NCBI RefSeq assembly: GCF_006345805.1
Contig: NC_043003.1
Location: 54,684,001-54,748,000, forward strand
Length of the DNA: 64,000 nt
Direction: 5' to 3'
Origin: Octopus sinensis
Lineage: Eukaryota
The notes beneath the pieces were generated by a model. The model saw nothing but the letters and a program-made list of their open reading frames with translations. It ran no database searches and was not told where the DNA came from. Both the position numbers and the translations under genes were made by a program. Below are positions 36,485 through 64,000 of the stretch, one piece after another. The stretch's first letter is position 1. Every line of letters starts with the position of its first letter.

Positions 36485-36530
<46 letters not shown>

Positions 36531-36536
36531 GTCATC

Positions 36537-36578
<42 letters not shown>

Positions 36579-36584
36579 GTCATC

Positions 36585-36630
<46 letters not shown>

Positions 36631-36652
36631 CATTATTATTATTATTATTATT

Positions 36653-36781
36653 CAGTAGTTTTATTTTTATAGCGTGCTTTCACTTCACTAGCGAGCGCAG
36701 ATCTGTGTGCCTTGGGTATGTGCTGTGATTTGTTGTGATGCCCTGATGGTTATTGTATGGAAAGTGTTCTGCGTAGGATGT
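36653..36781 (-). mobile_element. R4/Dong lineage A, extreme 3' fragment
   Basis: Matches the last codons (ILRRTLSIQ*) and 3' UTR of the copies at 37565 and 49611; flanked by (TTA)n. Confidence 0.85.
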
Positions 36782-36785
36782 ATTA

Positions 36786-36838
<53 letters not shown>

Positions 36839-36908
36839 TATTATTATTATTATTATTATCATTACTACTACTACTACTACTACTATTATTATTATTATTA
36901 TTATTATT

Positions 36909-37461
36909 GAGTGAGAGAGCAGTGCATGCCATCAAAGTGACACTGGGGTAAAATATACGAAGCCCAATATACCCATCATGACTACCCGTCTGATAAGGTA
37001 CACCAGGCACATGCATCACAACCATATGTGCGCGACATGGTGATCTCATATCAAGATAAACAGCACATGACCTTGCAGGAGGGGCCCAGTTAGAATTTTC
37101 TTCAGGTTGAGTAGCCCATCCCGCTCAAAAGGTCCCTGAATAAGGGTTGTTTAAGGATGTTGAAAGAACCACCCATGTTTCCAGAGGTGAATTATTCAAA
37201 CCCCAAAGAATCCCTCTCAACACATGGCTATGATGCTCCCCCACTACTTCTGCTCGTGATCAGAGATGCACATATCGTCAGCCACTAAGGGACATGCTCA
37301 ACTGGTTAAAGTCAAACAACTGACAAGCAAATCTGTGGTATTGAGCAGAATATTTGCTGTAGCCCATTTTTTATACCAAGACAAAACAATGTACATGATA
37401 AAACTTCCAATCAGTTAAAATCAGAAGCCATGAGAGCCACTGCCTGGTACTGCATCAGGGC

Positions 37462-37463
<2 letters not shown>
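36909..37463 (-). mobile_element. Element X, full-length copy
   Basis: Starts atgccctgatgcagtacc like the 46366 copy; flanked by (TTA)n. Confidence 0.85.
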
Positions 37464-37531
<68 letters not shown>

Positions 37532-37564
37532 GTTATTGTCATCGTTATTATTATTATTATTATT

Positions 37565-38900
37565 CAGTAGTTTTATTTTTATAGCGTGCTTTCACTTCAC
37601 TACCGAGCGCAGCTCAGTGTGCCTTGGGTATGTGCTGTGATTTGTTGTGATGCTCTGATGGTTATTGTATGGAAAGTGTTCTGCGTAGGATGTGTGCAGT
37701 GCCTAGTAGTGCAATTTTCTGTATGTTATATGTGTTAGTAAGTCCTGGTGTTTTTGTTATGTATTTGTCTGAATATTTTTTTATCATGCCTAATGCACCT
37801 ACTATGATAGGAACTGTTTCTGTTTTCAGGTTCCACATTCTAGTTACCTCTATTTCCAGGTCTTTGTATTTTGAGAGTTTCTCCATTTCTTTTTCAGAGA
37901 CACGTTGTCATCTGCCGGTATTGATACATCAATTAGAAAGCATTTTTTTCTTCATGATCTCTGACAACTATATCTGGTCTGTTGGCCTTAATTTCTCTAT
38001 CTGTGTGTATCGGCATATCCCAGAGTATGGTTGCTTTCTCGTTTTCTGTGACCTTTTCTGGTGTGTGCCTATACCATCTTTTTTTCTGTTGTTATTCCAT
38101 AATGTTGGTATAGCTTCCAATGTATGTAGGTCCCAACTCTGTCATGTCTGTGAATATATTCCTTCTTAGCCAGGACTGGGCAGCTAGAGATAATATGATT
38201 TATTGTTTCTTGTCCATCTCCACATATTCTGCAGTTACTTGTAATATTTCTTTTCATTACATGTTTTTGGTAATTTCTGGTGGGGAGGCTTTGGTCTTGT
38301 GCTGCAATTAAAAATCCCTCTGTTTCTGCTTTGAGTCCTGAGCTTCTCAACCATTGCTGGGATTTTTCTTTGTCTATTTCTTTTGCGTTTAGTTTAGTGC
38401 AGTATTTACCATGAAGGGGTTTTCTTGCCATCGTTTTATCATGGCTCGTTGCTGTTCTATTTTTAGTTTGGATTTCATTTGTTTTATAGCTTTTGTTGTT
38501 TCTTCATCATCTTCTTCTTCTTCTTTGTGTTTATTAGGTGGTATGATTTCTTGTTTGTATTTGTCAGCTTCCTTAAATACTGAGAACAGTTTTTTGTTTT
38601 GCTCGTGTTTTGCTGCTATCTGGATCAGTTTTCCTTCCTTCTGAAGTAGGTATTTTTGCAGTCCTATGGTGGTTATTTTATAGTAGTTTTCCAGCTGTAT
38701 AAGGCCTCTACCACCTTCTATACGTTGTATATATAGTCTTTCTATGTCAGATTTTGGGTGATGCATCCTAGATCCTGTCAGTATTTTTCTTGTTTCCTAT
38801 CTATTTTGGACAGTTCATTTCGTGTCCAGTTAAGGATATTGTAGCTGTAACTTATAACTGGGACAGCTAAAGTGTTGATACCTATTATCTTGTTTTTTTG

Positions 38901-39229: not shown

Positions 39230-39485
39230 GCCTTTGCACAGCTTCTAACGCTGGGGATGTACTACAGTGTCAGATGTTCACTATCAGTGAACTAAGGTAG
39301 CACCTTCCAGGATATTCGAGCAGTTCCAAACTGCTGTTTTCTGCAAGTGCTCCGCCCTTATTGCAGCCCGTGTTTGTTCCACGTACTTCTTGAGATTTTT
39401 GCTCACTGTTCCCAGGGCTCCGAGAATTATTTGTACTACTGCTACCTTTTTCATCGACCACAACTGCTTAACTTCTCAAGCTAAC
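39230..39485 (-). mobile_element. R4/Dong 3' fragment (different lineage, possibly the same family as D)
   Basis: LWSMKKVAVVQIILGALGTVSKNLKKY..HLQKTA; abuts a (TTA)n tract on its 3' side. Confidence 0.7.
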
Positions 39486-39527
39486 CTAGTAGTAGTCGTA
39501 GTAATAGTAGTAGTAGCAGCAAGAGTA

Positions 39528-39558
<31 letters not shown>

Positions 39559-39693
39559 TTTTGTTGCAGTTGTAGTAGTAGTTGTAATAATAATACAAGT
39601 AGTAATTGTTGTTTTAGCTGTAACAGTAGTAGTGTTGTAAATTTTATGTTTTTTGTTTGTTTTTATTCTTGTTTCTCATGTTACTCTTTCCAG

Positions 39694-39740
39694 GTAACGG
39701 ATCAGCAGATACCCTGGCCATATTCATCCGCTTGATATAG
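39694..39740 (+). CDS. Terminal coding exon that fits the gene above but lies on the opposite strand
   Basis: Long polypyrimidine tract and acceptor ttactctttccag|gt; 2+15x3 nt; (G)NGSADTLAIFIRLI*. The phase completes exon 4's split Gly codon. AATAAA at 40255-40260 is followed by a GT-rich stretch. Confidence 0.75.
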
Positions 39741-39852
39741 AAATAACCAAAACATATGCAGGCATCGTTAGTATTGTTGTTGCTATACCTGTCAATATGA
39801 CCATCTATATATCTATACCATTTCTCTAACTATACCATCTATATATCTATAC

Positions 39853-40079
39853 CAGTGGCTCTCAGACAGGGCTCACATGACCCTTGGGTGGAGGGCCATA
39901 TAAGATTTTGTTGTTAAAATCTATGTACAATAAATTGTTTATACTTCTTCAACCAACAAAATATTAGAATAATACAATTCCTAATAATATTTAATTACCA
40001 AAAATATATTAGGATTCCTTAAACATCAAATGGCTATGACGGGTCACTCAAGTAAAATAAGAATCGACAGGGACCACTG
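39853..40079. mobile_element. hAT-like MITE in the 3' UTR of the terminal exon
   Basis: Ends CAGTGGCTCTC / AGGGACCACTG; TSD not recognisable. Confidence 0.5.
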
Positions 40080-40336
40080 ATCCTAACCATCTATATATCT
40101 ATGAGAGCTATATCCCCATATATATATCTATACCATCTATGACCATCTATATATCTATATCATATCAATGCTATCTATACTATACTATATCTATACCACC
40201 TATATATATACTATATGACCATCACCGCTAACCCACACTCCATGTACACCACTCAATAAAAGTCTGTTCAACATTGGTCTTTGTTGTGATTCTCTTTCAT
40301 TCTCTCTCTCTCTCTTTTTGACTTTGAGTTAAAGAG

Positions 40337-40376
<40 letters not shown>

Positions 40377-40380
40377 GTAT

Positions 40381-40523
40381 TTAGCGGTTCGGCAAAAGAG
40401 ACCGATAGAATAAGTACTGGGCTTACAAAAGAATAAGTCCCGGGGTCGATTTGCTCGACTAGAGGCGGTGCTCCAGCATGGCCGCAGTCAAATGACTGAA
40501 ACAAGTAAAAGAGTAAAAGAGTA
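40381..40523 (+). mobile_element. SINE family B, 3' half only
   Basis: Starts abruptly at TTAGCGGTTCGG after an (ATT)n tract. Confidence 0.85.
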
Positions 40524-40524
40524 A

Positions 40525-40740
40525 TACCGATTGTTCCTCCTAGTCAGAAGAGTGCCGTCCCTTTCTTCGAACCTTGCACAAACCATGTGCATACAGAGGT
40601 GGTTCCTCAGCCCAGCTTCCGTTCTGCAAAACTCGTTCACAAATATAACTCTTGAATTGTCTGTCTCATGACATCGCTGGCTGCTGCATCGTCGTGACCT
40701 CATATATTTTACCATGCATGGTTAGGCCGCCAGATGACTT
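40525..40740 (-). mobile_element. Possible RTE 3' end remnant
   Basis: Basic stretch, then ..FCRTEAGLRNHLCMH (decayed C-terminal zinc-finger-like motif). Confidence 0.35.
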
Positions 40741-40889
40741 GTGTGTACACCTATATACCTATATTTCTCATTCACACATACTTTCTCATATATATGAATG
40801 CGAACTTTTGTGGTTTGTGTGTGCGATTGTGAAGATACGCACAAAGTTTCCCTCCCGCATATTTTTATGTATTTACTTATTGATGTTCG

Positions 40890-40944
<55 letters not shown>

Positions 40945-40961
40945 ATATATATATATATATA

Positions 40962-41001
<40 letters not shown>

Positions 41002-41391
41002 TAATATAGGATAAAATTTTTCGAAAAAAATTTTATCTATGGCCAGCATGTTAAAAAATACCTTTCAAGGTTAAATTTATAAACACCTTATAAACAAGGG
41101 CAAAAGAAAAAAATTTCTAATGCCAAATATGCCGTAACTAGACAGATCGACCATGACCATATAATTCATCACTATAAGCAGGCGTCTCGAAGAAAGTCGA
41201 CAGAAATTTCTAAACAATTCCGTTATTATCAAACGGATAATAAGTTGTATATATATATATATACACATGTGTGTGTGTGTATCAAAATAAGCAACAGGAT
41301 ATCCAGAGGTAATGCAGTACGATCGATTCAAGCGATTTCGTTTAATGGAACAATGCAACCATTAAATCAATTTAAATGCAGAGGAATCCTC

Positions 41392-41429
<38 letters not shown>

Positions 41430-42529
41430 TGCATCATTCTCAGCTTTTTCTGATTGATGTTATAAGATGACGAAAGGGAAATCGATTCTCCTGAATGATT
41501 AAAGTGACAGGTTTTTGCCAGATATCTTTTCGCACCCACACACAGATACAAACATGCACATTCACATACAGGGTTCCTAGGAGGCCCAGGTTCAATTCCC
41601 GACATGCGAACACAATTACAGACTTAGGCATGGCTTGGTGGTTAAGAAGGTCGCTTTCTTAGCAGTCACTTTGTTTCTGGTTCTTTCCCACTCCGTGGCA
41701 CTCTAATTAAGCACCTTGTAATATAGCCCCGGGTCGACCAGTGTCATGTGAATGTATTTGATTGTGAGTAACTGTGGGTCAGCTTATCGTGTAAATGGAT
41801 TGGGTTAATCTTATTTACTCATCCTGTATGAATGAGAAAATGCGATTAAGACAATCCATGTTAACAACATCCGGATTATCCAGTCGGATCATTCCGTTAG
41901 ATAGAAAAGTGTGAGCAGATATCCATCCAGATCCCATTTCTTACCTAAGATCACATTGCAGTCACCCTCTAAGACTAATGTATGGGATGTACCCTCACCT
42001 CGATGTGCTTGGCTTAACTCAGCAACCCTTCCACTTTAAATAAAACATGACAACTAAAAGATGTTAACATCTCATAATCGATTATTTGAATTACAGTTGA
42101 CTGAGTGTGAGAACCTATAGAGCTGCATTCATAAGCCTTGCTATTGTTCCAACGAGAAGACAAAGTTACAATCACATACACCGCATACAAAGATACAACG
42201 GGATTCCACACAATCTCCGTCTACTGAATTCACTGACGAAGTATTTAAAGGCTTGCTACAATAGTGGAAGACAAATGTGAGATTAAATCCAGTTGTTGAG
42301 ATATCAACAATACAACCAATGGACGCAAACGTGTGTTATTATACACTCGAATATTTGTTATGAAATTGTTATCGTTCTATAATGACACAATGTCTGTTGA
42401 GAAATTGGGGTTGGATTACCGTTTTCGCAACAGAAGGAAAGTGGTTCTCCTGGCCAGTCCTTTGAATGCGTGTGTGTATATGTATATATATATATATACA
42501 TACATATACATAGATACATACATACATAC

Positions 42530-42613
<84 letters not shown>

Positions 42614-42615
<2 letters not shown>

Positions 42616-42920
42616 AAGTGCAATGGCCCAGTGGTTAGGGCAGCGGACTCGCGGTCGTAGGATCGCGGTTTCGATTCCCAGACCGGGCATTGTGAGTGTT
42701 TATTGAGTGAAAACACCTAAAGTTCCACGAGGCCCCGGCGTGGGGTCGTGGCGATCCCTGCTGTACTCTTTCGCCACAACTTTCTCTCTTTCATCTGTTG
42801 GCCTGCTCGCTTAGCCAGCGGGTTGGCGTCACTTGAAGGCTAAAAGAATGCGAAGCGCATCGTGACCAGCGATGTGTAGCAACATCTGATAGCCTGGTCA
42901 CTCACGGTGATCACGGTGAT
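42614..42920 (+). mobile_element. tRNA(Arg)-like SINE family C
   Basis: A-box TGGCCCAGTGG, B-box GTTTCGATTCC, tail (CACGGTGAT)x2. Confidence 0.8.
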
Positions 42921-44320
42921 ATATATATATTATTTTAGTAATTTAGAACTTGCGTTAATTAACCTATAGGTTTTAATTCCAGTTCAAGTGCCACGAAGTT
43001 TCCATCGTGAGACGTGAGAATGTGTGTATGAATCTTTGCAGACGTTCACATTCTTCACCTACTACCCACTGACCCAGTCTGCCGACAAGCCGCTTAAGGC
43101 TTTTGGAATAAAAGATCGCCGACGCTCGGACATACAGCATGATGTCTCATTGATAGTTTTTTACATTCACAGAGCATTATTCTCCCCTCCCAGTCAGCAA
43201 TTATTAATATCGTTCATTCTAAGTGACCAACACCAAATATATTATGCCTTACTAATAAATATCACAGTTAAATTTTCATGCGTTTGCTTCAGTTTTTATT
43301 TTATTTTTCATGCAGCCAGTACGCAATTTCACCTTTATACTGCAACAGTCTTGGGATAACGTTCATACAACAATGATAGTGAAGCCATTTACTTCGACAA
43401 TGGTCATTCATACATTTTAAGCATCTCATCATTGACCAGCTCAATTCAAGCAACAAGCAAATCGCCTGACATAGGTATCTCTTACTACAGCGATTCGCTT
43501 CAAGGCGTAAATATGTTTATAAGTGATCGATGACAACTTTCAAGTTTGAATAGGTAATTTGCAAATAATAAGGAGTATAGTTTTCGAAGCTAACCATCCT
43601 TAACACTTCACACTTCCCAACAATTCGAATATAGAATTTATATCATTTATAGAATCAAACACTACAGAAAAAGATATTATTTCAGCAGTAGTTACGTATT
43701 TCATTTTCACTTTTTACCTTCCAAAAATCACATAGTTCTCAAAATAGCTTATTTCAACTGGTAACTATCGTAACTTAGTGATTCGACAAAACACCTCGAT
43801 AGAATGAATAGCAGACTTTAACAATAAGTACTGGAATTAATTTGTTCGACTAAAATATTTCTAGGTGGTGCCCCAGTATGGTCGCAGGCCAGTGACCGAA
43901 AAAAAAACAAATAAAAGATTATATAAATATTCAGCATTATTTAAAAATTAAATATTATTAAATATTTGTTGGTGGGTGCGGTGTATTAAGAATAATCAGT
44001 CTCATTTAATCTTTTACTTATCCTGTGTATCACATGTGAAGAACAGAATGTATTTCCCTGGAGATCATGCTTCCTATATGATATATGCATCCAAGTTGTT
44101 TGAAGCAGCAGAGTAAGGGAACAAGAGCTGTTTGAGATCAAGAATGGATAAAGTTATGAAAGTGATTTGCAAATGCAAATGTTAATTAAAATTGGGTTGC
44201 GAACATTGTTCCTAAAATAGAATTATGGATTCTTTTTTTTTTTTTTTTGGAAAATCATATAAGTGTCTGCAAGCAACAATAAATCTCTGAACGAGATGTA
44301 AACAGTAACTGCTCGACAAC

Positions 44321-44495
44321 GTAAAGTATACTAGCCATCTCAATATGGCTAACCACTAAGGGTGGGTGTTACTGTAGCTTTTAGGCCCAGGAGTGTGTCT
44401 AAAGCCAGCTGGAGACGATGATCTCCTGGGGCTAAAATCTACAGTAACACCCACCCTTAGTGGTTAGCCATATTGAGATGGCTAGTATACTTTAC
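44321..44495. repeat. Fold-back: 73-bp arms, 2 mismatches, 29-nt loop
   Basis: 44321-44393 is the reverse complement of 44423-44495. Confidence 0.95.
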
Positions 44496-44589
44496 ATATA
44501 AGTGTTCCGTGGATAAATGCTTTTTGATAATGCTGCTCTAAGTCAGAAAGACAAGATTATAGACATTCAGACGACAACGAAATACTTAC

Positions 44590-44753
44590 CGTCGTGCCAC
44601 ATCGTACTCAATTTCGTTTCAGAGTAGAGGATTGTAGGATAATGGTCTGATTGCTCCCAACCACATCCATGGAAACCGTCCATCATTGCCAACCAACCAC
44701 GGTGTGTCAAACAGCCACCACGAGCCTGTGCTACATAGAAACGGCGTAGGTTT
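44590..44753 (-). CDS. Coding exon 4 of the same gene
   Basis: Acceptor cctttctttatcccatacag|a, donor g|gtaagt; 164 nt = 1+54x3+1; NLRRFYVAQARGGCLTHRGWLAMMDGFHGCGWEQSDHYPTILYSETKLSTMWHD(G). Confidence 0.9.
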
Positions 44754-45187
44754 CTGTATGGGATAAAGAAAGGACGGTTCACTTTCAGGTATTTTTGTTG
44801 TCGCAATTCTACTTTGCAGTAGTTACGAATCAATTAAAAATTCGTAACGAATTTAAATAAACTCACAACCATTTCTCCGACAAAATGTTTCTCTCGTTCC
44901 AATGCTTCATTTCTTGAAACTAGAACTAGTCACAAACATTAGAATTTTCTCACACACATACACACACAGAGTTTAAGACAGATTTATCAAAGATAAGGTT
45001 AAAATATTGATTTCTAAAGAAGGTACAATGTCAGGAAATTTGGAGAAAAGGAAATATAGTTAATCACATCGATACGGTATTTCACTGGTTCATGGTTTTT
45101 GAACCGGAGGAAATGAAAAACGACGCGGTATTCGAACTCAGAATATGCAGGTAATTACGCAATATAATGGTTATTGTAAGAACATAC

Positions 45188-45351
45188 TCAACTCCAGCCA
45201 CTGAGAAATAATGGTTGTTCTCTGGTATCAGGTCAGTCCATGGAGAACTTTTCAGATTGTTGAGTGAGAACCAGCTTTGAAGGGTTGTATTACGGCCATC
45301 AAACACCATCGTTACAATATCTGCGTGGTTTTTGTATAGCACAAGTTTTAC
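45188..45351 (-). CDS. Coding exon 3 of the same gene
   Basis: Acceptor gcttttcttcag|gta, donor ga|gtatgt; 164 nt = 54x3+2; VKLVLYKNHADIVTMVFDGRNTTLQSWFSLNNLKSSPWTDLIPENNHYFSVAGV(E). Confidence 0.9.
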
Positions 45352-45384
45352 CTGAAGAAAAGCCCAAATATATTTATATATATT

Positions 45385-45587
45385 ACGGAGATGTACTTGC
45401 ATAGCGAGTGACTTGATCTGAGATCGTGTGCTGGAACGAAAACAATTGCAGCGTGGAAGGTGTTTATAAGCCATTTAAGAAACACACAAAACCGTTAGAT
45501 TCACTTCAACATTTAAATTTAATTTGTCAAAATATTTTCGTCGCTTTGAGACCGCGACCTGTTCACTGACAAAACTTCGTGCTGCAT
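45385..45587 (-). mobile_element. Solo Penelope-type terminal repeat (pLTR-like) containing a hammerhead motif
   Basis: ~200-bp segment between AT/microsatellite tracts containing a minimal type-I hammerhead fold (45523-45573). Confidence 0.55.
45523..45573 (-). ncRNA. Minimal type-I hammerhead ribozyme motif with G3:C8 core covariation
   Basis: TTTGTCA-GTGAACA-G-GTCGC(ggtctcaaa)GCGAC-GAAA-ATAT-TT-TGACAAA: 7-bp stem I, 5-bp stem II, palindromic AATATT stem III. Confidence 0.6.
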
Positions 45588-45633
45588 ATTTATATGTATT
45601 TATATATATGACTCTGTATGTGTGTGTGTGTGT

Positions 45634-45674
<41 letters not shown>

Positions 45675-46117
45675 CGTGTGATATATAATGAAAAACACAT
45701 CGCCATGGGCAAATTTACTGCAGTATTTATACAGAGGTAAAATCACTTATTGACGTGCTGTGTTTAAAAGCACAATATGTATCGGAGGGAGACGAAAGTC
45801 GTTCCAACAGCGGCGTGTGAAACCACTACATGCATTTCTATCCTGTTAGGCGTCCTGTTAATTGCGTATACTCACAACCAACCACTTACTTAGAGAAGAT
45901 ATTTTACCACAGATATATAGGTAAACATTGAATAAACAATCACAGGTGTTGCTAATAGATGCGCGGATCAATAAAGACCCCTTATATGCCATGCAGGTAG
46001 TATTTGATTAAAATAGCCATTTTTTCTATCACATTTAATATAAATACATCGATATGCTAATTTACTGCCGTACTCTTCAAGAATATATGCAGCGTAAGTG
46101 TCTGTGTGTATACACAC

Positions 46118-46296
46118 CTGTTCAATTGGAAGATGGTTCCAGATATCAAGTATTGGATGTCGGAAGAAATTCGGACGATAGATACCACTGCATTTGTCCA
46201 CATTCCAAGTTGAAGGACTTCCTATATTGAGGAAGGAATTATAGATTGACGAATTTGCTCCTTTTGATATGGCATAGGCTTTAATCCATTCACTTC
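46118..46296 (-). CDS. Coding exon 2 of the same gene (start of C-terminal domain)
   Basis: Acceptor ttatttcag|ga, donor cag|gtgtgt; 179 nt = 2+59x3; (R)SEWIKAYAISKGANSSIYNSFLNIGSPSTWNVDKCSGIYRPNFFRHPILDIWNHLPIEQ; phases fit exon 1 (phase 1) and exon 3 (phase 0). Confidence 0.88.
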
Positions 46297-46327
46297 CTGA
46301 AATAATAAAAATAATAATAATAATAAT

Positions 46328-46365
<38 letters not shown>

Positions 46366-46367
<2 letters not shown>

Positions 46368-46920
46368 GCCCTGATGCAGTACCAGGCAGTGGCTCTCATG
46401 GCTTCTGATCTTAACTGATTGGAAGTGTTATCATGTACATTGTTTTGTCTTGGTATAAAAGATGGGCTACAGCAAATATTCTGCTCAATACCACAGATTT
46501 GCTGTCAGTTGTTTGACCTTAACCAGTTGAGCATGTCCCTTAGTGGCTGACGATATGTGCATCTCTGATCACGAGCAGAAGTAGTGGGGGAGCATCATAG
46601 CCATGTGGTTGAGAGGGATTCTTTGGGGTTTGATAGTTCACCTCTGGAAACATGGGTGGTTCTTTCAACATCCTTAAACAACCCTTATTCAGGGACCGTT
46701 TGAGCGAGATGGGCTACTCAACCTGAAGAAAATTCTAACTGGGCCCCACCTGCAAGGTCATGTGCTGTTTATCTTGATATGAGATCACCATGTCGTGCAC
46801 ATATGGTTGTGATGCATGTGCATGGTGTACCTTTATCAGACGGTTAGTCATGATGGGTATATTGGGCTTCGTATATTTTACCCCAGTGTCACTTTGATGG
46901 CATGAACTGCTCTCTCACTC
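46366..46920 (+). mobile_element. Element X, full-length copy
   Basis: atgccctgatgcagtacc...ctctcactc between (AAT)n tracts. Confidence 0.85.
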
Positions 46921-46949
46921 AATAATAATAATATAATAATATAATAATA

Positions 46950-47014
<65 letters not shown>

Positions 47015-47015
<1 letters not shown>

Positions 47016-47316
47016 GAAAAAGAAAGAAGAGTGCCATTGTCATCAGGTGATGACAATGGCACGTTTCTTTTTTCTTCTATATCTAGAGGAATTACCCCAA
47101 TCCTATAAATATTAACCAAAATGAAGTAGATGGACACGTTTATTTCTTAAACCTGTGGATGACACACGAGGTGTCGAAATATCGTTCACTTGATAACAAT
47201 GGGACACTTCCTCCCACCCAGGCTTTCAGTCATACTATAACGTCTCTTATCCTTCACTCACCCTAGGATGCTGGGTGTGCCTCGACAAGTGATTGTAACA
47301 AACAAGCAGATTAAAA

Positions 47317-47318
<2 letters not shown>
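47015..47318 (+). mobile_element. Element Y copy 1 (hairpin + hammerhead-like motif + Dong-like 3' tail)
   Basis: About 96% identical by eye to 48144-48443, with identical ends; (AAT)n flanks. Confidence 0.7.
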
Positions 47319-47370
<52 letters not shown>

Positions 47371-47423
47371 GTAATAATAATAATAATAATAATAAGGATA
47401 ATAATAATAATAATAATAATAAT

Positions 47424-47895
47424 GAAAGCAACCATACTCTGGGATATGCCGATACACACAGACAGAGAAATTAAGGCCAACAGACCAGATATAGTTGTCA
47501 GAGACCATGAAGAAAAAAATGCTTTCTAATTGATGTATCAATACCGGCTGATGACAACGTGTCTCTAAAAGAAATGGAGAAACTCTCAAAATACAAAGAC
47601 CTGGAAATAGAGGTAACTAGAATGTGGAATCTGAAAACAGAAACAATTCCTATCATAGTAGGTGCATTAGGCATGATAAAAAAATATTCAGACAAATACA
47701 ACATAACAAAAACACCAGGACTTACAAACACATATAACATACAGAAAATTGCACTACTAGGCACTGCACACATCCTACGCAGAACACTTTCCATACAATA
47801 ACCATCAGAGCATCACAACAAATCACAGCACATACCCAAGGCACACAGAGCTGTGCTCGGTAGTGAAGTGAAAGCACGCTATAAAAATAAAACTA

Positions 47896-47898
<3 letters not shown>
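47424..47898 (+). mobile_element. R4/Dong lineage A, short 5'-truncated copy
   Basis: ATILWDMPIHTDREIKANRPDIVVRD..LIDVSIPADDNVSLKEMEKLSKYKDL..; (TAA)n on both sides. Confidence 0.92.
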
Positions 47899-47928
<30 letters not shown>

Positions 47929-48085
47929 TATAATGATAATAATAATTATAATAATAATGATAATAATAATAATAATAATAATAACAATAATAATAATAAT
48001 AATAATAATAATGATAATAATGATAATAATAATAATAATAATAATGATAATAATAATGATGATAATAATAATAATAATAATAATG

Positions 48086-48127
<42 letters not shown>

Positions 48128-48143
48128 TAATAATAATAATAAT

Positions 48144-48441
48144 AGAAAAAGAAAGAAGAGTGCCATTGTCATCAAGTGATGACAATGGCACGTTTCTTTT
48201 TGCTTCTATATCTTGAGGAATTACCCCAATCCTATAAATATTAGCCAAAATGAAGTAGATGGACATTTTATTTCTTGAACCTGTGGATGTCACACGAGAT
48301 GTCGAAATATCGTTCACTTGATAACAATGGGATACTCCCCCCCCAGGCTTTCAGTCATACTATAACGTCTCTTATCCTTCACTCACCCTAGGATGCTGGG
48401 TGTGCCTCGACAAGTGATTGTAACAAACAAGCAGATTAAAA

Positions 48442-48443
<2 letters not shown>
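48144..48443 (+). mobile_element. Element Y copy 2
   Basis: See copy 1. Confidence 0.7.
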
Positions 48444-48499
<56 letters not shown>

Positions 48500-48503
<4 letters not shown>

Positions 48504-49611
48504 CCACCATAGGACTGCAAAAATACCTACTTCAGAAGGAAGGAAAACTGATCCAGATAGCAGCAAAACACGAGCAAAACAAAAAACTGTTCTCAGTATT
48601 TAAGGAAGCTGACAAATACAAACAAGAAATCATACCACCTAATAAACACAAAGAAGAAGAAGAAGATGATGAAGAAACACCAAAAGCTATAAAACAAATG
48701 AAATCCAAACTAAAAATAGAACAGCAACGAGCCATGATAAAACGATGGCAAGAAAACCCCCTTCATGGTAAATACTGCACTAAACTAAACGCAAAAGAAA
48801 TAGACAAAGAAAAATCCCAGCAATGGTTGAGAAGCTCAGGACTCAAAGCAGAAACAGAGGGACTTTTAATTGCAGCACAAGACCAAAGCCTCCCCACCAG
48901 AAATTACCAAAAACATGTAATGAAAAGAAATATTACAAGTAACTGCAGAATATGTGGAGATGGACAAGAAACAATAAATCATATTATCTCTAGCTGCCCA
49001 GTCCTGGCCAAGAAGGAATATATTCACAGACATGACAGAGTTGGAACATACATACATTGGAAGCTATGCCAACATTATGGAATAACAACAGAAAAAAGAT
49101 GGTATAGGCACACACCAGAAAAGGTCACAGAAAACGAGAAAGCAACCATACTCTGGGATATGCCGATACACACAGATAGAGAAATTAAGGCCAACAGACC
49201 AGATATAGTTGTCAGAGATCATGAAGAAAAAAATGCTTTCTAATTGATGTATCAATACCGGCAGATGACAACGTGTCTCTGAAAAAGAAATGGAGAAACT
49301 CTCAAAATACAAAGACCTGGAAATAGAGGTAACTAGAATGTGGAACCTGAAAACAGAAACAATTCCTATCATAGTAGGTGCATTAGGCATGATAAAAAAA
49401 TATTCAGACAAATACATAACAAAAACACCAGGACTTACTAACACATATAACATACAGAAAATTGCACTACTAGGCACTGCACACATCCTACGCAGAACAC
49501 TTTCCATACAATAACCATCAGAGCATCACAACAAATCACAGCACATACCCAAGGCACACTGAGCTGCGCTCGGTAGTGAAGTGAAAGCACGCTATAAAAA
49601 TAAAACTACTG
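48500..49611 (+). mobile_element. R4/Dong lineage A, 1.1-kb 5'-truncated copy
   Basis: ORFs 48698-49243 and 49290-49514 (CCHC knuckle, RHD, PD..D RLE motifs) split by frameshifts; (TAA)n flanks. Confidence 0.92.
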
Positions 49612-49669
49612 AATAATAATAATAATAATAACGATGACAATAACAATAATAATAATAATAATAATAATT

Positions 49670-49726
<57 letters not shown>

Positions 49727-50275
49727 TGATGCAGTACCAGGCAGTGGCTCTCATGGCTTCTGATCTTAACTGATTGGAAGTGTTATCATGTACATTGTTT
49801 TGTCTTGGTATAAAAGATGGGCTACAGCAAATATTCTGCTCAATACCACAGATTTGCTTGTCAGTTGTTTGACCTTAACCAGTTGAGCATGTCCCTTAGT
49901 GGCTGACGATATGTGCATCTCTGATCACGAGCAGAAGTAGTGGGGGAGCATCATAGCCATGTGTTGAGAGGGATTCTTTGGGGTTTGAATATTTCACCTC
50001 TGGAAACATGGGTGGTTCTTTGAACATCCTTAAACAACCCTTATTCAGGGACCTTTTGAGCGGGATGGGCTACTCAACCTGAAGTAAATTCTTACAGGCC
50101 CCACCTGCAAGGTCATGTGCTGTTTATCTTGATATGAGATCACCATGTCGCGCACATATGGTTGTGATGCATGTGCCTGGTGTACCCTTATCAGACGGGT
50201 AGTCATGATGGGTATATTGGGCTTCGTATATTTTACCCCAGTGTCACTTTGATGGCATACATTGCTCTCTCACTC
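49727..50275 (+). mobile_element. Element X copy
   Basis: Near-full copy between (AAT)n tracts. Confidence 0.85.
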
Positions 50276-50306
50276 AATAATAATAATAATAATAGTAGTA
50301 GTAGTA

Positions 50307-50396
<90 letters not shown>

Positions 50397-51068
50397 GTAA
50401 TAATAATAATAATAATAATCCTGCTATCATGTTAAACTGCATGGGTTGTGGAGACTTGACGTAGGATATAATGAGGTTTCCTTTTAGCATAATTACACTT
50501 AGGTCATACTTGGTCAAGTTGTAGCACCTGTAAGTCCAGGTTGATGTCTGGCAGGATTTAGGTCTGTTCCATGAGGTAGGATTGCTGCTTTAGCCTTGAT
50601 CGTCACCCCCTCTAGAGATGGTGTTTCAATAAAGATACCGATGGTTGTGTCACCTCATCACTGCAGAGCGAAAATGTCAAATACAAATGCTTTGAACAAC
50701 GGTGTCAATGAGATTGGAAGCGTTAATGTTGAAAACTCGCCTGGCAGTTTAAGCCCGGTCGTCATCTAGAAACTGCAGTACGGAGGAAAGACGGAATGCA
50801 ACTGTGGTGGAATGTTACATCCGAAGTGAAAGCAGTGACATGGAGGTTCAACGGCCGCAGGAGCACCAGTAGCAGCAACAACAACAATAACAAATATCAA
50901 CAGCAACAAAAACAACAGTGCTGGTTTCAAATTTTAGCACAAGGCCAGCAGTTTCATGGGGTAGAGGAGTATGTCGATATCATCGATCGCCAGTGTTCAA
51001 CTGGTACTTACATCTTAACGCAGGATGAAAAAAAGCAACAACAGTAATAATAAAGAAGCTTTACTTAC

Positions 51069-51408
51069 TTTTAAAGAAGGAAATCTCGTTGCTGTCATTC
51101 GTGCTGACGACTGTCATTATATCTTTCGGTGAGTAATTCTTACAAACACGGCTGACTTTGTTGTAAGTGAAAAATTACGATTGGCTCCTGAGAGACAGCG
51201 CGGTACAGTCGAGTAGATTTCGTGTTGAGAAGAATTGTTCTGTTGGAGATGTATGAAGGTAAGCATATGTATAACCAGAACCCAAAGATTTGTAATAAGC
51301 CTCCTGATCTGAGGTAACAACCAGAAATGTTGTAATGGTTAGCAGCAGCACTGTTGTCACAGCTAGACAGGTAACAGGAAAAAGCGACATTCATAGCTCT
51401 ATGATCGC
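51069..51408 (-). pseudogene. First coding exon of a secreted PAN/Apple-like-domain protein gene, with an in-frame premature TAA
   Basis: Pyrimidine-rich acceptor (tttcttttcccatctgtctcactcag|) at 51409; ATG at 51390 directly after an in-frame TGA. Reads MSLFPVTCLAVTTVLLLTITTFLVVTS-DQEAYYKSLGSGYTYAYLHTSPTEQFFSTRNLLDCTALSLRSQS*FFTYNKVSRVCKNYSPKDIMTVVSTNDSNEISFFK, then donor a|gtaagt (phase 1, matching the next exon). Hydrophobic signal peptide; C..(C)...FTYN....C pattern resembles PAN/Apple. Confidence 0.8.
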
Positions 51409-53535: not shown

Positions 53536-53761
53536 TAACCCTTTAGTATTTAAACCGGCCATATCCGGCCAAAATATTTAATCTGTTTTATGTTCAAACT
53601 GACCAGATCCAGACCCTCACACCTACCCTACAATGTTATTCTACATTAGGTAATTACACCATCAAGATCTTGAAGATATGAGATAATGCATGATTAATTC
53701 AAATCAATGTGAATCAATAAGCATTATGTTTGATAGAATAATCAGAACATTAAAGGGTTAA
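53536..53761. mobile_element. piggyBac-like MITE
   Basis: (T)TAACCCTTTA ... TAAAGGGTTAA termini (TTAA target + CCC). Confidence 0.55.
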
Positions 53762-54134
53762 AAGCTAGTATCTCTGCTGAACAATTTGTAATATTGCACT
53801 GTATGTAATAGTACGTTGGCACGCGAAAGATGTATGAAGGCAATATAGAGAATTGAAAATGTTAGAGTAAATATTCAGTTCAGTTAATTGATTTAGTTGA
53901 AGCTTACAATATTACAGCTAAGAACTCGCGGGAACTGCTTATATCCTACGTAGTATATTGTCTATGTAATCCCCAAAATATTTTATTCCGTAAGCAGTGT
54001 CAAAATAATTTTAAATGTACATAATAGCAAACACCTTTTACTGCAACCTTAACATCAGACTATCATCTTATAAACAAATTAATTTTGAAAAAAAACTTCT
54101 AATTTACTTGTCTTTTGACATACATTCTCTAGAT

Positions 54135-54335
54135 CAGTGCTTTTCAAACGTTTTGCTGGAGCGGAACCCCAAGGAAACATTCCACTGGCTCGGGGAACCC
54201 CTGTGCAATAATTTAATAGTCTTATGCACACATATCTGCACAGGAGAATTAAAAATTACTGCCGATTTTAGCAGTTTTGTAACTTCTTGCGGAACCCCTG
54301 GACTGTACTGGCGGAACCCTGGTTGAAAACTACTG
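54135..54335. mobile_element. hAT (Charlie-like) MITE with intact 8-bp TSD
   Basis: TIRs CAGTGCTTTTCAA / TTGAAAACTACTG; direct repeat CTCTAGAT at 54127-54134 and 54336-54343. Confidence 0.85.
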
Positions 54336-60276: not shown

Positions 60277-62089
60277 ATATAATGTGTCATCCCATAAATA
60301 ATACGGTATACAAAGGGAGAGATACATTAATTGTTAGCGCTAGAAGCAGCATTAATACGAAAGAATAATATTTATATCCAATTTAACATGGATGTCTTGT
60401 TAGAATTCAGAATACTGCATTTTTAAGCCATAGATCATAGCAGACAAGAATTATCTGTCATGGGTGCTGGAATTCCTATATGAGGTGCTTTCATTCTGCT
60501 GGAAATAATCAGTGGAAAGCGTCTGGTTACTGCACGCCAGTGAAATCTAGCTGTTACGATATATAGAATATCATCCTCTTTTCAGACACTAATGTCGCAG
60601 ATTGCCAACAGGCTTACTAAAATTTAATTATTAACAGCAGGAGTTAATGACAAGTCATCCATATTAAGTTAGATATAAAGATAACCTCGTGCTATTAATA
60701 CAGCCAAACCAGCATCAAACAATACTTTAACATGAAAAAAATATAGGTTAAGATCACATTGAAAATAACACGGAATGACTATTGCTTGAATAGGACTGCT
60801 CAGTCAGAGCCACATTTGGTCTCAACTGGTTGAAGAACAGCACTACTGAGAACATTGTAAAGTATTCAAGAAGCGTTTAGATATATGGTTGAATATATTG
60901 ATTTCCATAGTTAATTTCGCAGCTATTAAGTTGAAGTTTACTACTTTATCTATTTTCTTCAACAGCCCCCGGTTACGCGTCTACGTCACATCTCCAGACC
61001 TATTGTTCGCTCTTAATCGTAAGTCAAAATGTTGACTATCTTTATTTATCAGTAGCAATACTTGGTTTAGATTAACTTTCGCTGCAAGATTTCTTACATA
61101 CAAGCTTTAAATCATAATATTGGAAAAATACTTACTATGTATTAATCATGAGCATGAATTTTGTTGTCTCGCTAAGAAATCAGACGTCTATCTTATCAAT
61201 CAACTGTTATTTGACTCAATAAACCTGTCATCTGCATTATCATTGAATGTTTGATCTTGATTAAAATATGACAAAAATAAGTATAATAAAGAAAACTGGA
61301 AGAAACGAAGTTTGCATTATCCATCAAATGTTATGTCGTCTGTATTATAATTCCACAGCTTATTGGCTCGCAAGTAAAACTGTTCTCTGTATGATATTTA
61401 TCAATAGAGATTTAGCGTCAGCAACACTTTCGTTGAAACTTGTAATCGGAGAGATGTAGAATATGTAAGGAACGTAAGATTAAGCAATCTTGTTAAACTT
61501 TGAGTGTGACGAAAGGAACTATGCAAATCCCCCCCCCCACTCTAGCCCATCTGCTTGACCGCATCCTTAAATTGTAACGAATGCAGGTTTCTTCAAGGCG
61601 TAATTCTAGAAGAAATTCTAACCGCACCCAAGCCTTCATAGAACTAGTCAATTTCATCGTAAAATGGCGCCAGATTCTTTATAAGTGGGGCTGTATCCTA
61701 AACAAAAGCAAACAAAACGTAAGAAATACACAGGCATTCAAATAACTTAACAGGAACGTAGAGAGCAACACATGCACACACATATTAGACATGTACAAAC
61801 ACACATACATATTAACAATGATATTGTCAGTCAGATTGCCAAAGAAACAGAAATGAAAAAGAATTGCCATTTTCTACATACTTTCTTAAATAGCATTCTT
61901 TTACATGTTCCTTTTATTTTAAGTGGGGGGGCTCTATTCAAGGCAGCGTTTCTTCAATAGGTTATCCCATTCACTTTGCCTCTCATCTTCTGTTTACTTC
62001 TTTCCCTTTCTATTTTAGAATATCATCATATTTTCTTTCTTTCTAATAACATACTTATATTTATAATGTCTGACTGCCTCTCTTTATAA

Positions 62090-62091
62090 AC

Positions 62092-62175
<84 letters not shown>

Positions 62176-62254
62176 GCATATATGTGTATATATCTATCTA
62201 TATATATAAATATATATGTGTATATTACATATATATTCATACACATACATATGA

Positions 62255-62305
<51 letters not shown>

Positions 62306-62417
62306 ATATATATATATTTATATGCATATATATATGTATATATGTACATATATATATATTTATACATATATATATATTATATATATATATATATATAGTA
62401 TATATATATATATATTT

Positions 62418-62450
<33 letters not shown>
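62090..62450. repeat. Long interrupted (TA)n microsatellite (one of dozens in the window)
   Basis: Direct inspection. Confidence 0.95.
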
Positions 62451-62456
<6 letters not shown>

Positions 62457-63152
62457 CACAGGAAGACACAGATATATCTCTTAAAATTTATGCATAATAG
62501 CATAATAGATGTGTATGTGTGTATGCATGTTTGTATGTGTGTGTATGTATGCTCATATTTCCAACTACATAATGATTTATTGCCATAAATACATAATAGG
62601 TAAGAAACTAATTCACACAAATACATACATGCATACATGTATATGTGTGTGGGTTTATATCTATGTATGCAACACGCATACACAAAAGCACACACACGCA
62701 CCACATATCTACACACACACACACACACATGCACATATATATTCATATGTTTGTGCGTTTATGTACAGAGATGTGTGTTTATGTTAACGTATGAGTGACT
62801 TTATCAGTCTTCTGCTTTCCCAAGTGAGCCACAAATTGAAATTAGTTTCAAGCAAGCAGCAAGCAAAAGTATATTATATATATATATATATTATCTTCAT
62901 ATCAAATTAAAGCAGGAGCTCTGTGTCATGCTGTACAAGACAAGAAATTAACACAAACAAATTTATCAAATTAAAAGCAATATGCTAAATATTATATTTC
63001 GAAGCAGAAAATAGCCTATGACACAAACGAGTGAAATATTTTTACATCCTGTTGTTCTGCTTGTTATAGAGGTTTGTTCAAAATTTATTGATTCGAGGAA
63101 ACTGACGTATCACAAATGTTCAGGGATGCATTATCGACTTTGTGCATGTAAG

Positions 63153-63187
<35 letters not shown>

Positions 63188-63361
63188 ACACATACATACA
63201 TACATATATACATACATACGCACGTACGTACGTACATACGTACCTACATCTGTATATATATATATATAAAAATATACATAAATATATTCACATACATACT
63301 TAGGTATATACGATTAAATACTTATGCACGCACACACACACATGCCTCTGCACATATATAA

Positions 63362-63458
<97 letters not shown>

Positions 63459-63530
63459 CATATACATATATACAAACACACTCGCAGATACGAACACTCA
63501 CACTCAGACATACGCACATACACAGACAGG

Positions 63531-63568
<38 letters not shown>

Positions 63569-63842
63569 ATATATATATATTATTCATAAATATGCATACA
63601 TACACGCATAAATGCGCGCGTGGGTACAAACAAATATGGGCGAATAAACACGCGAACCTTTAATGCTGTATACTGTTTCTGATTGAAAACGGAAGAAGAT
63701 AGTATTCCCTAATTGCTGATAGGTTTATGTTTATTCATATTTTCACTTAATTATTGAATCTGATATTAGTCATTTAGTTTCTTTATATCCACACATGTAT
63801 ATCAATATCGTGATGAATTTTGTACATTCATATGCATATGGC

Positions 63843-63912
<70 letters not shown>

Positions 63913-64000
63913 CGCACATAGTATTGTAACATATATTGTGATGTATTTTGTACATTTATGTACAATTGTTATATATATATGAATGTATATATACATACAC

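What the first reader, a model, noticed from the sequence alone, without database searches (positions are those of the whole stretch)
39694..51408. Gene whose terminal exon lies on the opposite strand from its other four exons
Seen: four - strand exons splice in frame and end in a split Gly codon (..MWHD G|gtaagt). The only exon I found that completes it (cag|GT AAC GGA TCA GCA GAT ACC CTG GCC ATA TTC ATC CGC TTG ATA TAG, plus AATAAA at 40255) is 4.8 kb away on the + strand. I found no - strand terminal exon and no + strand upstream exons in the window. From memory, AD.LAIFIRL is the usual C-terminus of this molluscan family (needs confirming). Inference: a local inversion of about 35.5-40.4 kb (real or assembly), a tail-to-tail paralogue with long introns, or, least likely, trans-splicing as in Drosophila mod(mdg4).
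Basis: partly seen in the sequence, partly recalled or inferred. Interest (0 to 1): 0.72.

Follow-up and report, generated by a model that had tools for sequence, protein, structure and literature searches.

The report
Broken octopus gene copy, stray exon
This is a recently duplicated, already disabled copy of an octopus gene that lost its own last exon; the matching exon on the opposite strand is a stray piece of another family member, so it is an ordinary scar of gene-family turnover and not a gene spliced across two strands.

Summary
The arrangement exists in the assembly. The window is Octopus sinensis chromosome CM016865.1, locus LOC118764136. Four - strand exons (51390-51069, 46296-46118, 45351-45188, 44753-44590) end in a split Gly codon. 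The only family-type terminal exon in 122 kb is on the + strand at 39694-39740.

An invariant Cys is also Arg.

The copy is a young duplicate of LOC118768508 (3.3% intron, 2.2% exon divergence). A three-way alignment with the O. bimaculoides orthologue puts the end of homology at window 43045/6, about 0.4 kb before their shared terminal exon (...ADSMAIFIQL*). That missing 3' end is nowhere in the 122 kb.

The + strand exon differs from the sister's at 12 of 44 bases (P = 1e-8) and is equally distant from every sampled paralogue. It is therefore not this copy's own exon turned round.

There are no assembly gaps, no other + strand family exons in 98 kb upstream, and no usable inverted repeats. 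Best reading: a truncated pseudogene next to an orphan family fragment. Trans-splicing is very unlikely. Interest is low.

The parts
51069..51390 (-). Exon 1 of the family copy: ATG, hydrophobic N-terminus and a PAN/Apple-like region. It is 322 nt long and ends in phase 1.
   Evidence: Profile-HMM hits to positions 1-74 and 76-111, on either side of the stop. A weak Pfam PAN_3 match, E = 0.12.
51175..51177 (-). In-frame TAA at codon 72. Family members have Glu or Gln here (SQS[EQ]FFTYN).
51115..51117 (-). ATG (Met 92) at which the NCBI model LOC118764136 (P0001) starts, downstream of the stop.
   Evidence: L001 10001 = window 51117.
46118..46296 (-). Exon 2 (179 nt). The codon at 46177-46175 is CGT (Arg 148) where all 14 aligned family members, the sister and the O. 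bimaculoides orthologue have Cys.
45188..45351 (-). Exon 3 (164 nt).
44590..44753 (-). Exon 4 (164 nt). It ends ..MWHD G, followed by the donor gtaagt.
43045..44589 (-). The retained 5' part of intron 4, colinear with the sister gene and with the O. bimaculoides orthologue.
43044..43046 (.). Rearrangement breakpoint. The window, L002 and L007 agree up to ..GAAGAATGTGAA. L002 and L007 then continue together to their exon 5, and the window does not.
39694..39740 (+). Orphan family-type terminal exon (G|GT AAC .. = NGSADTLAIFIRLI*). The acceptor is ttccag, and a (TAG/GTA)n tract lies at about 39470-39640, as upstream of paralogue terminal exons.
40255..40260 (+). AATAAA, 515 nt after the stop of the orphan exon. 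No evidence that it is used.
41992..42272 (+). Low-copy 285-bp fragment, 95% identical to the region 1.1 kb upstream of exon 1 of another family gene (L005 54984-55268). It may be a second cluster-derived fragment.
36781..38678 (+). Composite repeat (modules A and B with (ATT)n), an inverted copy of 48498-50405 in intron 1 (97.6%). Both modules are multi-copy at 94-98% elsewhere, so this is not evidence of an inversion.

Best explanation
The - strand unit is a young, unprocessed duplicate of a gene from the octopus Apple-domain family cluster on chromosome CM016888.1 (the LOC118768508 lineage). It now sits on chromosome CM016865.1.

The copy runs from the promoter region through exon 4 and stops in the middle of intron 4, at window 43045/6. 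It therefore lacks the lineage's own terminal exon. It has since gained a nonsense codon in exon 1 and lost an invariant cysteine. It is a pseudogene, or at best yields the truncated product with an unrelated tail that NCBI predicts.

The + strand exon at 39694-39740 is a separate, orphan fragment of a different family member: its terminal exon plus a few hundred bases of intron. It lies 3.3 kb beyond the breakpoint in the opposite orientation.

Inferred rather than shown: the two pieces came together either in one complex, fragment-joining duplication or through later deletion in a tail-to-tail pair. Both kinds of arrangement are seen in the family's home cluster. The pieces are not spliced together.
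For: Identity of the locus
- The window is 100% identical to CM016865.1, and the gene is LOC118764136.

Parent lineage
- Window 46365->43045 is colinear with L002 18297->23112, with 3.3% substitutions in introns and 2.2% in exons.
- The same stretch is colinear with the O. bimaculoides orthologue, L007 10974->15222. The start of intron 1, 51053->50369, matches L007 8873->9558.

Breakpoint
- In the three-way alignment the window departs at 43045/6. L002 and L007 stay together through their exon 5 and 0.8 kb beyond.
- Nothing of L002 23113-26200 is found in the window or in L001.

The + strand exon is foreign to this lineage
- It differs from the sister exon at 12 of 44 bases. The binomial P is 1.3e-8 at a 3.3% rate.
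- It matches every sampled paralogue at 28-32 of 41 bases, whereas L002 and L007 match each other at 37 of 41.

Decay of the copy
- TAA at codon 72, and Cys148Arg at an invariant column.
- Of the window-derived changes in exons 2-4, five are nonsynonymous and one is synonymous. Exon and intron divergence do not differ (Fisher P = 0.21).

Precedent in the family cluster
- Terminal exons lie tail to tail 2.5 kb apart in L002.
- L002 also has a 481-bp inverted copy of an exon 4 and a 100-nt exon 1 fragment inside intron 4.
- L005 has a whole gene nested in inverted orientation.

Other support
- A second low-copy fragment, 95% identical to the upstream region of a cluster gene, lies between the breakpoint and the orphan exon.
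- There are no N runs in 119 kb.
Against: - The source of the orphan exon was not found. No annotated Octopus protein ends in ADTLAIFIRLI, and no sampled locus matches it above about 78%. How and when it arrived is inference.
- The junction at 43045/6 could not be confirmed in any independent assembly or read set.
- NCBI annotates the locus as protein-coding.
- Exons 2-4 are still open, as expected at 2-3% divergence, so 'pseudogene' rests on one nonsense codon, one lost cysteine and the missing last exon.
- The 285-bp fragment could be a rare transposable element and not cluster DNA.
Confidence: 0.65

Rival explanations
1. Assembly artefact. The contig is chimeric or locally mis-assembled, so the sequence left of about 43046 does not really adjoin the gene, or the segment carrying the + strand exon is mis-oriented.
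For: The region is full of young multi-copy repeats and microsatellites. In another family locus of the same assembly two exon-5 regions are 100% identical in inverted orientation, which could be a haplotig artefact. The junction was found in no other data.
Against: There are no N runs in the window or in 119 kb around it, so a flipped scaffolded contig is excluded. The breakpoint lies in unique sequence, not in a repeat. Re-orienting the segment would still not restore this lineage's own terminal exon, because the + strand exon belongs to another lineage.
Confidence: 0.12
2. A real local inversion of the gene's own terminal exon. An old resident family member at this site had its 3' end inverted, and its exons 2-4 were later overwritten by ectopic gene conversion from the LOC118768508 lineage. 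That conversion would explain why only those exons look young.
For: High-identity colinearity with L002 is limited to 46365-43045. Exon 1 and the + strand exon are both about as far from the sampled O. sinensis paralogues as paralogues are from one another.
Against: - The start of intron 1 in the window (51053-50369) is homologous to the O. bimaculoides orthologue of that same lineage.
- A 100-nt exon 1 fragment inside L002 is 97% identical to the window's exon 1. Exon 1 therefore belongs to the young lineage too.
- No inverted-repeat substrate flanks the exon; only 35 bp are shared.
- No matching inverted intron 4 sequence was found.
Confidence: 0.08
3. An intact tail-to-tail paralogue on the + strand, whose exons 1-4 lie far upstream across very long introns.
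For: Tail-to-tail pairs exist in the family cluster. The exon has a good acceptor, the correct phase and a downstream AATAAA.
Against: No + strand family exon is found in 97.6 kb upstream by tblastn or by profile HMM. Last introns in the sampled paralogues are about 0.2-9.4 kb. No + strand gene is called there.
Confidence: 0.03
4. Trans-splicing of a - strand pre-mRNA (exons 1-4) to a + strand transcript carrying the terminal exon, as in Drosophila mod(mdg4).
For: The phase and the coding sense would complete a family-length protein of 291 residues.
Against: The 5' part has a premature stop and a lost invariant cysteine. The exon comes from another paralogue lineage. There is only one such exon, not a set of alternatives. 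No RNA evidence is available.
Confidence: 0.01

Closest known systems
Octopus sinensis LOC118768508 (P0002, CM016888.1) and its O. bimaculoides orthologue LOC128251094 (P0023)
   Same: Exons 2-4 and most of introns 2-4 are colinear. The window differs by 2-3% from the O. sinensis sister and is 86-94% identical to O. bimaculoides. Splice phases are the same. An intron-4 palindromic insert is shared with the sister.
   Different: Those genes keep their own terminal exon (..ADSMAIFIQL*) about 2 kb after exon 4 on the same strand. The window copy ends 0.4 kb short of it. It has a stop in exon 1 and Arg in place of the invariant Cys.
Unprocessed (duplicated) pseudogenes and orphan exon fragments in tandem gene-family clusters (general knowledge)
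   Same: Introns are retained, the parent gene is identifiable, a disabling mutation is present and one end is truncated. Stray exon fragments lie nearby in either orientation, as also seen at L002 and L005.
   Different: Nothing essential. The copy sits on a different chromosome from the home cluster, and its neighbour fragment happens to supply exactly the exon that is missing.
Drosophila mod(mdg4) trans-splicing of exons encoded on opposite strands
   Same: Only the geometry: 5' exons on one strand and a phase-compatible 3' exon on the other.
   Different: mod(mdg4) has many alternative 3' exons with their own promoters, an intact conserved ORF and direct RNA evidence. Here there is a single foreign exon, a broken ORF and no RNA evidence.
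Molluscan Apple/PAN proteins with a C-terminal domain of about 150-180 aa and no Pfam model
   Same: The window's conceptual product aligns over its full length with 293-296-aa Octopus members. Relatives occur in Argonauta and Aplysia. The C-terminal domain is found in 1054 representative proteins, including amphioxus and crinoid multidomain proteins.
   Different: The function of the family is unknown. The fold prediction is mediocre (pLDDT 61), and its similarity to fibrinogen-related domains is below significance (E about 0.02).

Membership tests
Octopus Apple-domain family (LOC118768508-like, about 295 aa) | Homology across exons 1-4 with the family's exon boundaries and phases | tested here: met
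   E = 1e-110 to full-length members. HMM hits cover profile positions 1-280. The phases are reproduced.
Octopus Apple-domain family (LOC118768508-like, about 295 aa) | Uninterrupted reading frame | tested here: not met
   TAA at codon 72, window 51177-51175.
Octopus Apple-domain family (LOC118768508-like, about 295 aa) | Invariant residues, including the Cys of the ..FCPNFFRHP.. motif | tested here: not met
   Arg148 where 14 of 14 members, the sister and the O. bimaculoides orthologue have Cys.
Octopus Apple-domain family (LOC118768508-like, about 295 aa) | Terminal exon encoding G.G.ADSMAIFIRL.. on the same strand, 0.2-9.4 kb after exon 4 | tested here: not met
   None on the - strand in 122 kb. 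The only one is on the + strand and comes from another lineage.
Unprocessed duplicated pseudogene | Introns retained and a parent gene identifiable by colinear intron homology | tested here: met
Unprocessed duplicated pseudogene | Disabling lesion(s) and truncation | tested here: met
   Nonsense codon, lost Cys, and a breakpoint in intron 4.
Unprocessed duplicated pseudogene | Relaxed selective constraint | tested here: inconclusive
   Exon divergence is 2.2% and intron divergence 3.3% (P = 0.21). Window-derived changes are 5 nonsynonymous to 1 synonymous. This fits relaxed constraint, but the numbers are small.
Simple local inversion of the gene's own 3' end | The inverted segment carries the rest of intron 4 and the terminal exon at the same divergence as the rest of the copy | tested here: not met
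   No match to L002 23113-26200 in either orientation. The exon differs at 12 of 44 bases, P = 1.3e-8.
Simple local inversion of the gene's own 3' end | Inverted repeats or paired breakpoints flanking the segment | tested here: not met
   The SINE-like ends share 35 bp. The other inverted pairs are (TA)n tracts or multi-copy repeats that enclose exons 2-4 as well.
mod(mdg4)-type inter-strand trans-splicing | Intact, conserved common 5' ORF | tested here: not met
mod(mdg4)-type inter-strand trans-splicing | Chimeric mRNA joining exons from the two strands | not testable with these tools
   No RNA-seq data are available. No transcript-derived protein for this locus is in the protein collection; the P0001 cluster has one member, the NCBI model.

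The most novel reading that the evidence does not exclude
The locus is expressed, and the exon 4 donor is trans-spliced to a + strand transcript carrying the orphan exon. That would rebuild a family-type C-terminus from two strands, with the UAA either bypassed by starting at Met 92 or recoded. It would be a mod(mdg4)-like case in a cephalopod, assembled from pieces of two paralogues.
Probability: 0.01. Interest if true: 0.75.

Novelty: already known. Interest (0 to 1): 0.12.

Why it matters
It matters little as biology. It is one more example of birth-and-death turnover in a lineage-specific octopus gene family, with fragmentary duplicates in both orientations.

It is useful as an annotation warning:
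- LOC118764136 is modelled as protein-coding, with a start downstream of a nonsense codon, a 92-kb last intron and an unrelated tail. It is better treated as a probable pseudogene.
- A phase-compatible exon near a truncated gene need not belong to it. Comparing with the sister copy and an outgroup settles this quickly.

Tried and rejected
- Paralogous exons in the window: tblastn at E up to 50 found only noise.
- Pfam on the conceptual protein: only a weak PAN_3 match.
- The NCBI tail exon inside the window: absent, because it lies 47.8 kb beyond the left end.
- Source of the orphan exon: searched in six family loci (L002-L007). The best match was 72-75% over 70-95 bp. LOC118764338, on the same chromosome but 42 Mb away, has a different C-terminus.
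- Resumed homology to the sister's 3' end after a possible transposon insertion at the breakpoint: none.
- The 1.9-kb inverted repeat pair (36.8-38.7 and 48.5-50.4 kb) as an inversion substrate: rejected. It would flip exons 2-4 together with the orphan exon, and its modules are ordinary multi-copy repeats.
- Independent confirmation of the junction, by exact look-up of the two ORFs that span it: not on record.
- Rfam on the whole window: nothing.
- Literature on the family or the assembly: nothing specific is held.
- Fold search of an AlphaFold model of a full-length paralogue: only sub-threshold fibrinogen-related hits.
Full report
**What the sequence is.** The window is 100% identical, in reverse orientation, to Octopus sinensis chromosome CM016865.1 (GCA_006345805.1). 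Window positions 1-61117 correspond to locus L001 61117-1. The - strand unit is NCBI gene LOC118764136 (P0001).

**Checking the observation.**
- Reading both strands and translating confirms four - strand exons: 51390-51069, 46296-46118, 45351-45188 and 44753-44590. The NCBI protein confirms the boundaries of exons 2-4.
- They total 829 nt and end with the first base of a Gly codon before gtaagt.
- The + strand piece 39694-39740 follows an acceptor ttccag and reads GT AAC GGA ... TTG ATA TAG.
- AATAAA is at 40255-40260.
About half of 48 Octopus relatives end in [AG]DS[MI]A[IV]FI[RQ][LM] plus 0-5 residues. Argonauta and Aplysia relatives have the same ending.
- Three scans cover the window plus the 58 kb to its left held in L001: tblastn with all 48 relatives, a motif scan and a profile-HMM scan of six-frame fragments. 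They find family sequence only at these five places.

- Exon 1 has an in-frame TAA at 51177-51175 (codon 72), where relatives read SQS[EQ]FFTYN.
- Residue 148 is Arg where all 14 aligned full-length members, the sister gene and the O. bimaculoides orthologue have Cys.
- The NCBI model accordingly starts at Met 92, downstream of the stop. It splices exon 4 across 92 kb to a 49-codon exon with no family similarity, at L001 108898-109044, which is 47.8 kb left of the window.
- Last introns in the sampled paralogues measure about 0.2-9.4 kb.

**Where the copy came from.**
- At the DNA level, window 46365->43045 is colinear with L002 18297->23112. L002 is the locus of LOC118768508 in the family cluster on CM016888.1.
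- Counting substitutions only, the exons differ by 2.2% (11/507) and the introns by 3.3% (91/2733). The difference is not significant.
- The same stretch is colinear at 86-94% with L007, the O. bimaculoides orthologue LOC128251094.
- The first 0.7 kb of the window's intron 1 (51053->50369) matches L007 8873->9558, next to an assembly gap.
- A 100-nt piece of exon 1, 97% identical to the window's, sits inside intron 4 of L002.
- Together these place exon 1 through intron 4 of the window in one young lineage. It was duplicated after the split from O. bimaculoides. A palindromic insert at 44321-44495 is shared with L002 but absent from L007, which agrees with that timing.

**The breakpoint.** In a three-way alignment the window, L002 and L007 agree up to ..GAAGAATGTGAA (window 43045/6). 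L002 and L007 then continue together through their terminal exon (..ADSMAIFIQL*) and 0.8 kb beyond. The window turns into unrelated sequence. The breakpoint lies about 0.4 kb before the position of that exon. Nothing of L002 23113-26200 is present in the window or L001 in either orientation. The window is therefore the derived, truncated state.

**The + strand exon is not this copy's own.**
- It differs from the sister's terminal exon at 12 of 44 bases, where 1-2 differences are expected at 3.3% (binomial P = 1.3e-8).
- Over 41 coding bases it matches every sampled paralogue at 28-32 positions, whereas L002 and its O. bimaculoides orthologue match at 37.
- Over 120 nt with flanks it is 58-67% identical to all of them.
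- It is nevertheless a true family terminal exon. It has the same phase, the same acceptor context, a trinucleotide tract upstream as in the paralogues, and blastn E-values of 5e-7 to 6e-6 to four paralogue exons.
- No + strand exons 1-4 lie within 97.6 kb upstream, so it is an orphan.

**Testing the inversion and assembly ideas.**
- There are no N runs in the window or L001, so a flipped scaffolded contig is excluded.
- The long inverted pair 36781-38678 / 50405-48498 (97.6%) encloses exons 2-4 as well as the orphan exon. It is made of repeat modules present at 94-98% identity in many loci.
- The other inverted pairs are (TA)n tracts.
- Exact look-ups of the two ORFs that span the junction found no independent contig. 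A chimeric contig therefore remains possible, but re-orienting anything would not supply the lineage's own exon.

**Context that makes the mosaic unsurprising.** The home cluster shows the following:
- terminal exons facing each other 2.5 kb apart in L002;
- a 481-bp inverted copy of an exon 4;
- the 100-nt exon 1 fragment in an intron;
- a whole gene nested in inverted orientation in L005.

Between the breakpoint and the orphan exon, window 41992-42272 is a low-copy fragment 95% identical to the region 1.1 kb upstream of another family gene in L005. This suggests that more than one cluster fragment was joined here.

**Conclusion on mechanism.**
- Shown: the copy is a truncated duplicate with a nonsense codon and a lost invariant Cys. 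The + strand exon belongs to another lineage.
- Inferred: the pieces were brought together either by one complex duplication that joined fragments in both orientations, or by decay of a tail-to-tail pair. They are not spliced together.
- Changes polarised with O. bimaculoides as outgroup are mostly nonsynonymous in both sister copies. The window lineage has 5 nonsynonymous and 1 synonymous; the L002 lineage has 3 nonsynonymous plus a 3-bp insertion. This fits relaxed constraint, but the numbers are small.

**The family.**
- Members are about 295 aa, with a hydrophobic N-terminus and a weak PAN/Apple signal (one source names a member 'Apple domain-containing protein'). Their C-terminal domain has no Pfam model.
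- A profile search finds that C-terminal domain in 1054 representative proteins. They include Argonauta, Aplysia, amphioxus and crinoid proteins, where it sits beside ZP, Sushi, F5/8-C and PAN domains.
- An AlphaFold model of P0004 is mediocre overall (pLDDT 61) but scores 80-92 across much of the C-terminal half. Its Foldseek hits to fibrinogen-related domains are consistent in kind but below significance (E at best 0.02).
- The function is unknown and does not bear on the verdict.

**Verdict.** The arrangement is real in the assembly, but the feature is ordinary: a decaying duplicate beside a stray family exon. Interest is low.

Noticed in passing
window 44321-44393 and 44423-44495: A near-perfect palindrome in intron 4: 73-nt arms, 97% complementary, 29-nt loop. 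The sister locus L002 has it (21593-21767, 86.5%) but O. bimaculoides L007 does not. It looks like a MITE inserted after the species split and before the duplication. Rfam finds nothing there.
   Followed up: partly
L002 22416-22516 (sister gene, intron 4): A 100-nt piece of family exon 1, 97% identical to window 51318-51219, replaces 11 nt of intron. It looks like a small templated insertion.
   Followed up: partly
L002 16654-17134 vs 27944-27464: A 481-bp inverted duplicate (97.9%) that carries a copy of exon 4 of the neighbouring tail-to-tail family gene. The NCBI model P0002 uses it as an upstream coding exon.
   Followed up: partly
L005 9983-49157: A complete family gene lies in inverted orientation inside intron 1 of LOC118768485. 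The two exon-5 regions are 100% identical over 120 nt. This is either a very recent inverted duplication or a haplotig artefact of the assembly.
   Followed up: no
window 46301-50405 and 36487-38897: Intron 1 and the region upstream of the orphan exon are built from three repeat modules (about 0.7, 1.4 and 0.5 kb), each bounded by (ATT)n tracts. Copies 94-98% identical occur in every family locus sampled. These modules cause the strong AT-skew flips in the window.
   Followed up: partly
L001 108898-109044 (47.8 kb left of the window): This is the terminal exon used by the NCBI model of LOC118764136. It follows a 92-kb intron and an acceptor tttgtag, and has 49 codons with no family similarity. 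It is probably a cryptic or spurious 3' end.
   Followed up: partly
window 53758-53924 and 54128-54320: Two low-copy fragments upstream of the gene. One is 95% identical to L005 11323-11489. The other is 91% identical to L003 9671-9855, just upstream of that gene's exon 1. They may be further cluster-derived fragments or rare repeats.
   Followed up: no
protein family (A1): The C-terminal domain of about 150-180 aa has no Pfam model, yet it occurs in more than 1000 representative proteins across molluscs, amphioxus and echinoderms, plus one Myxococcota protein, often beside PAN, Sushi, ZP or F5/8-C domains. It may be a distant fibrinogen-related fold.
   Followed up: partly
window 62001-64000: G+C falls to 0.238, the lowest value in the window.
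   Followed up: no
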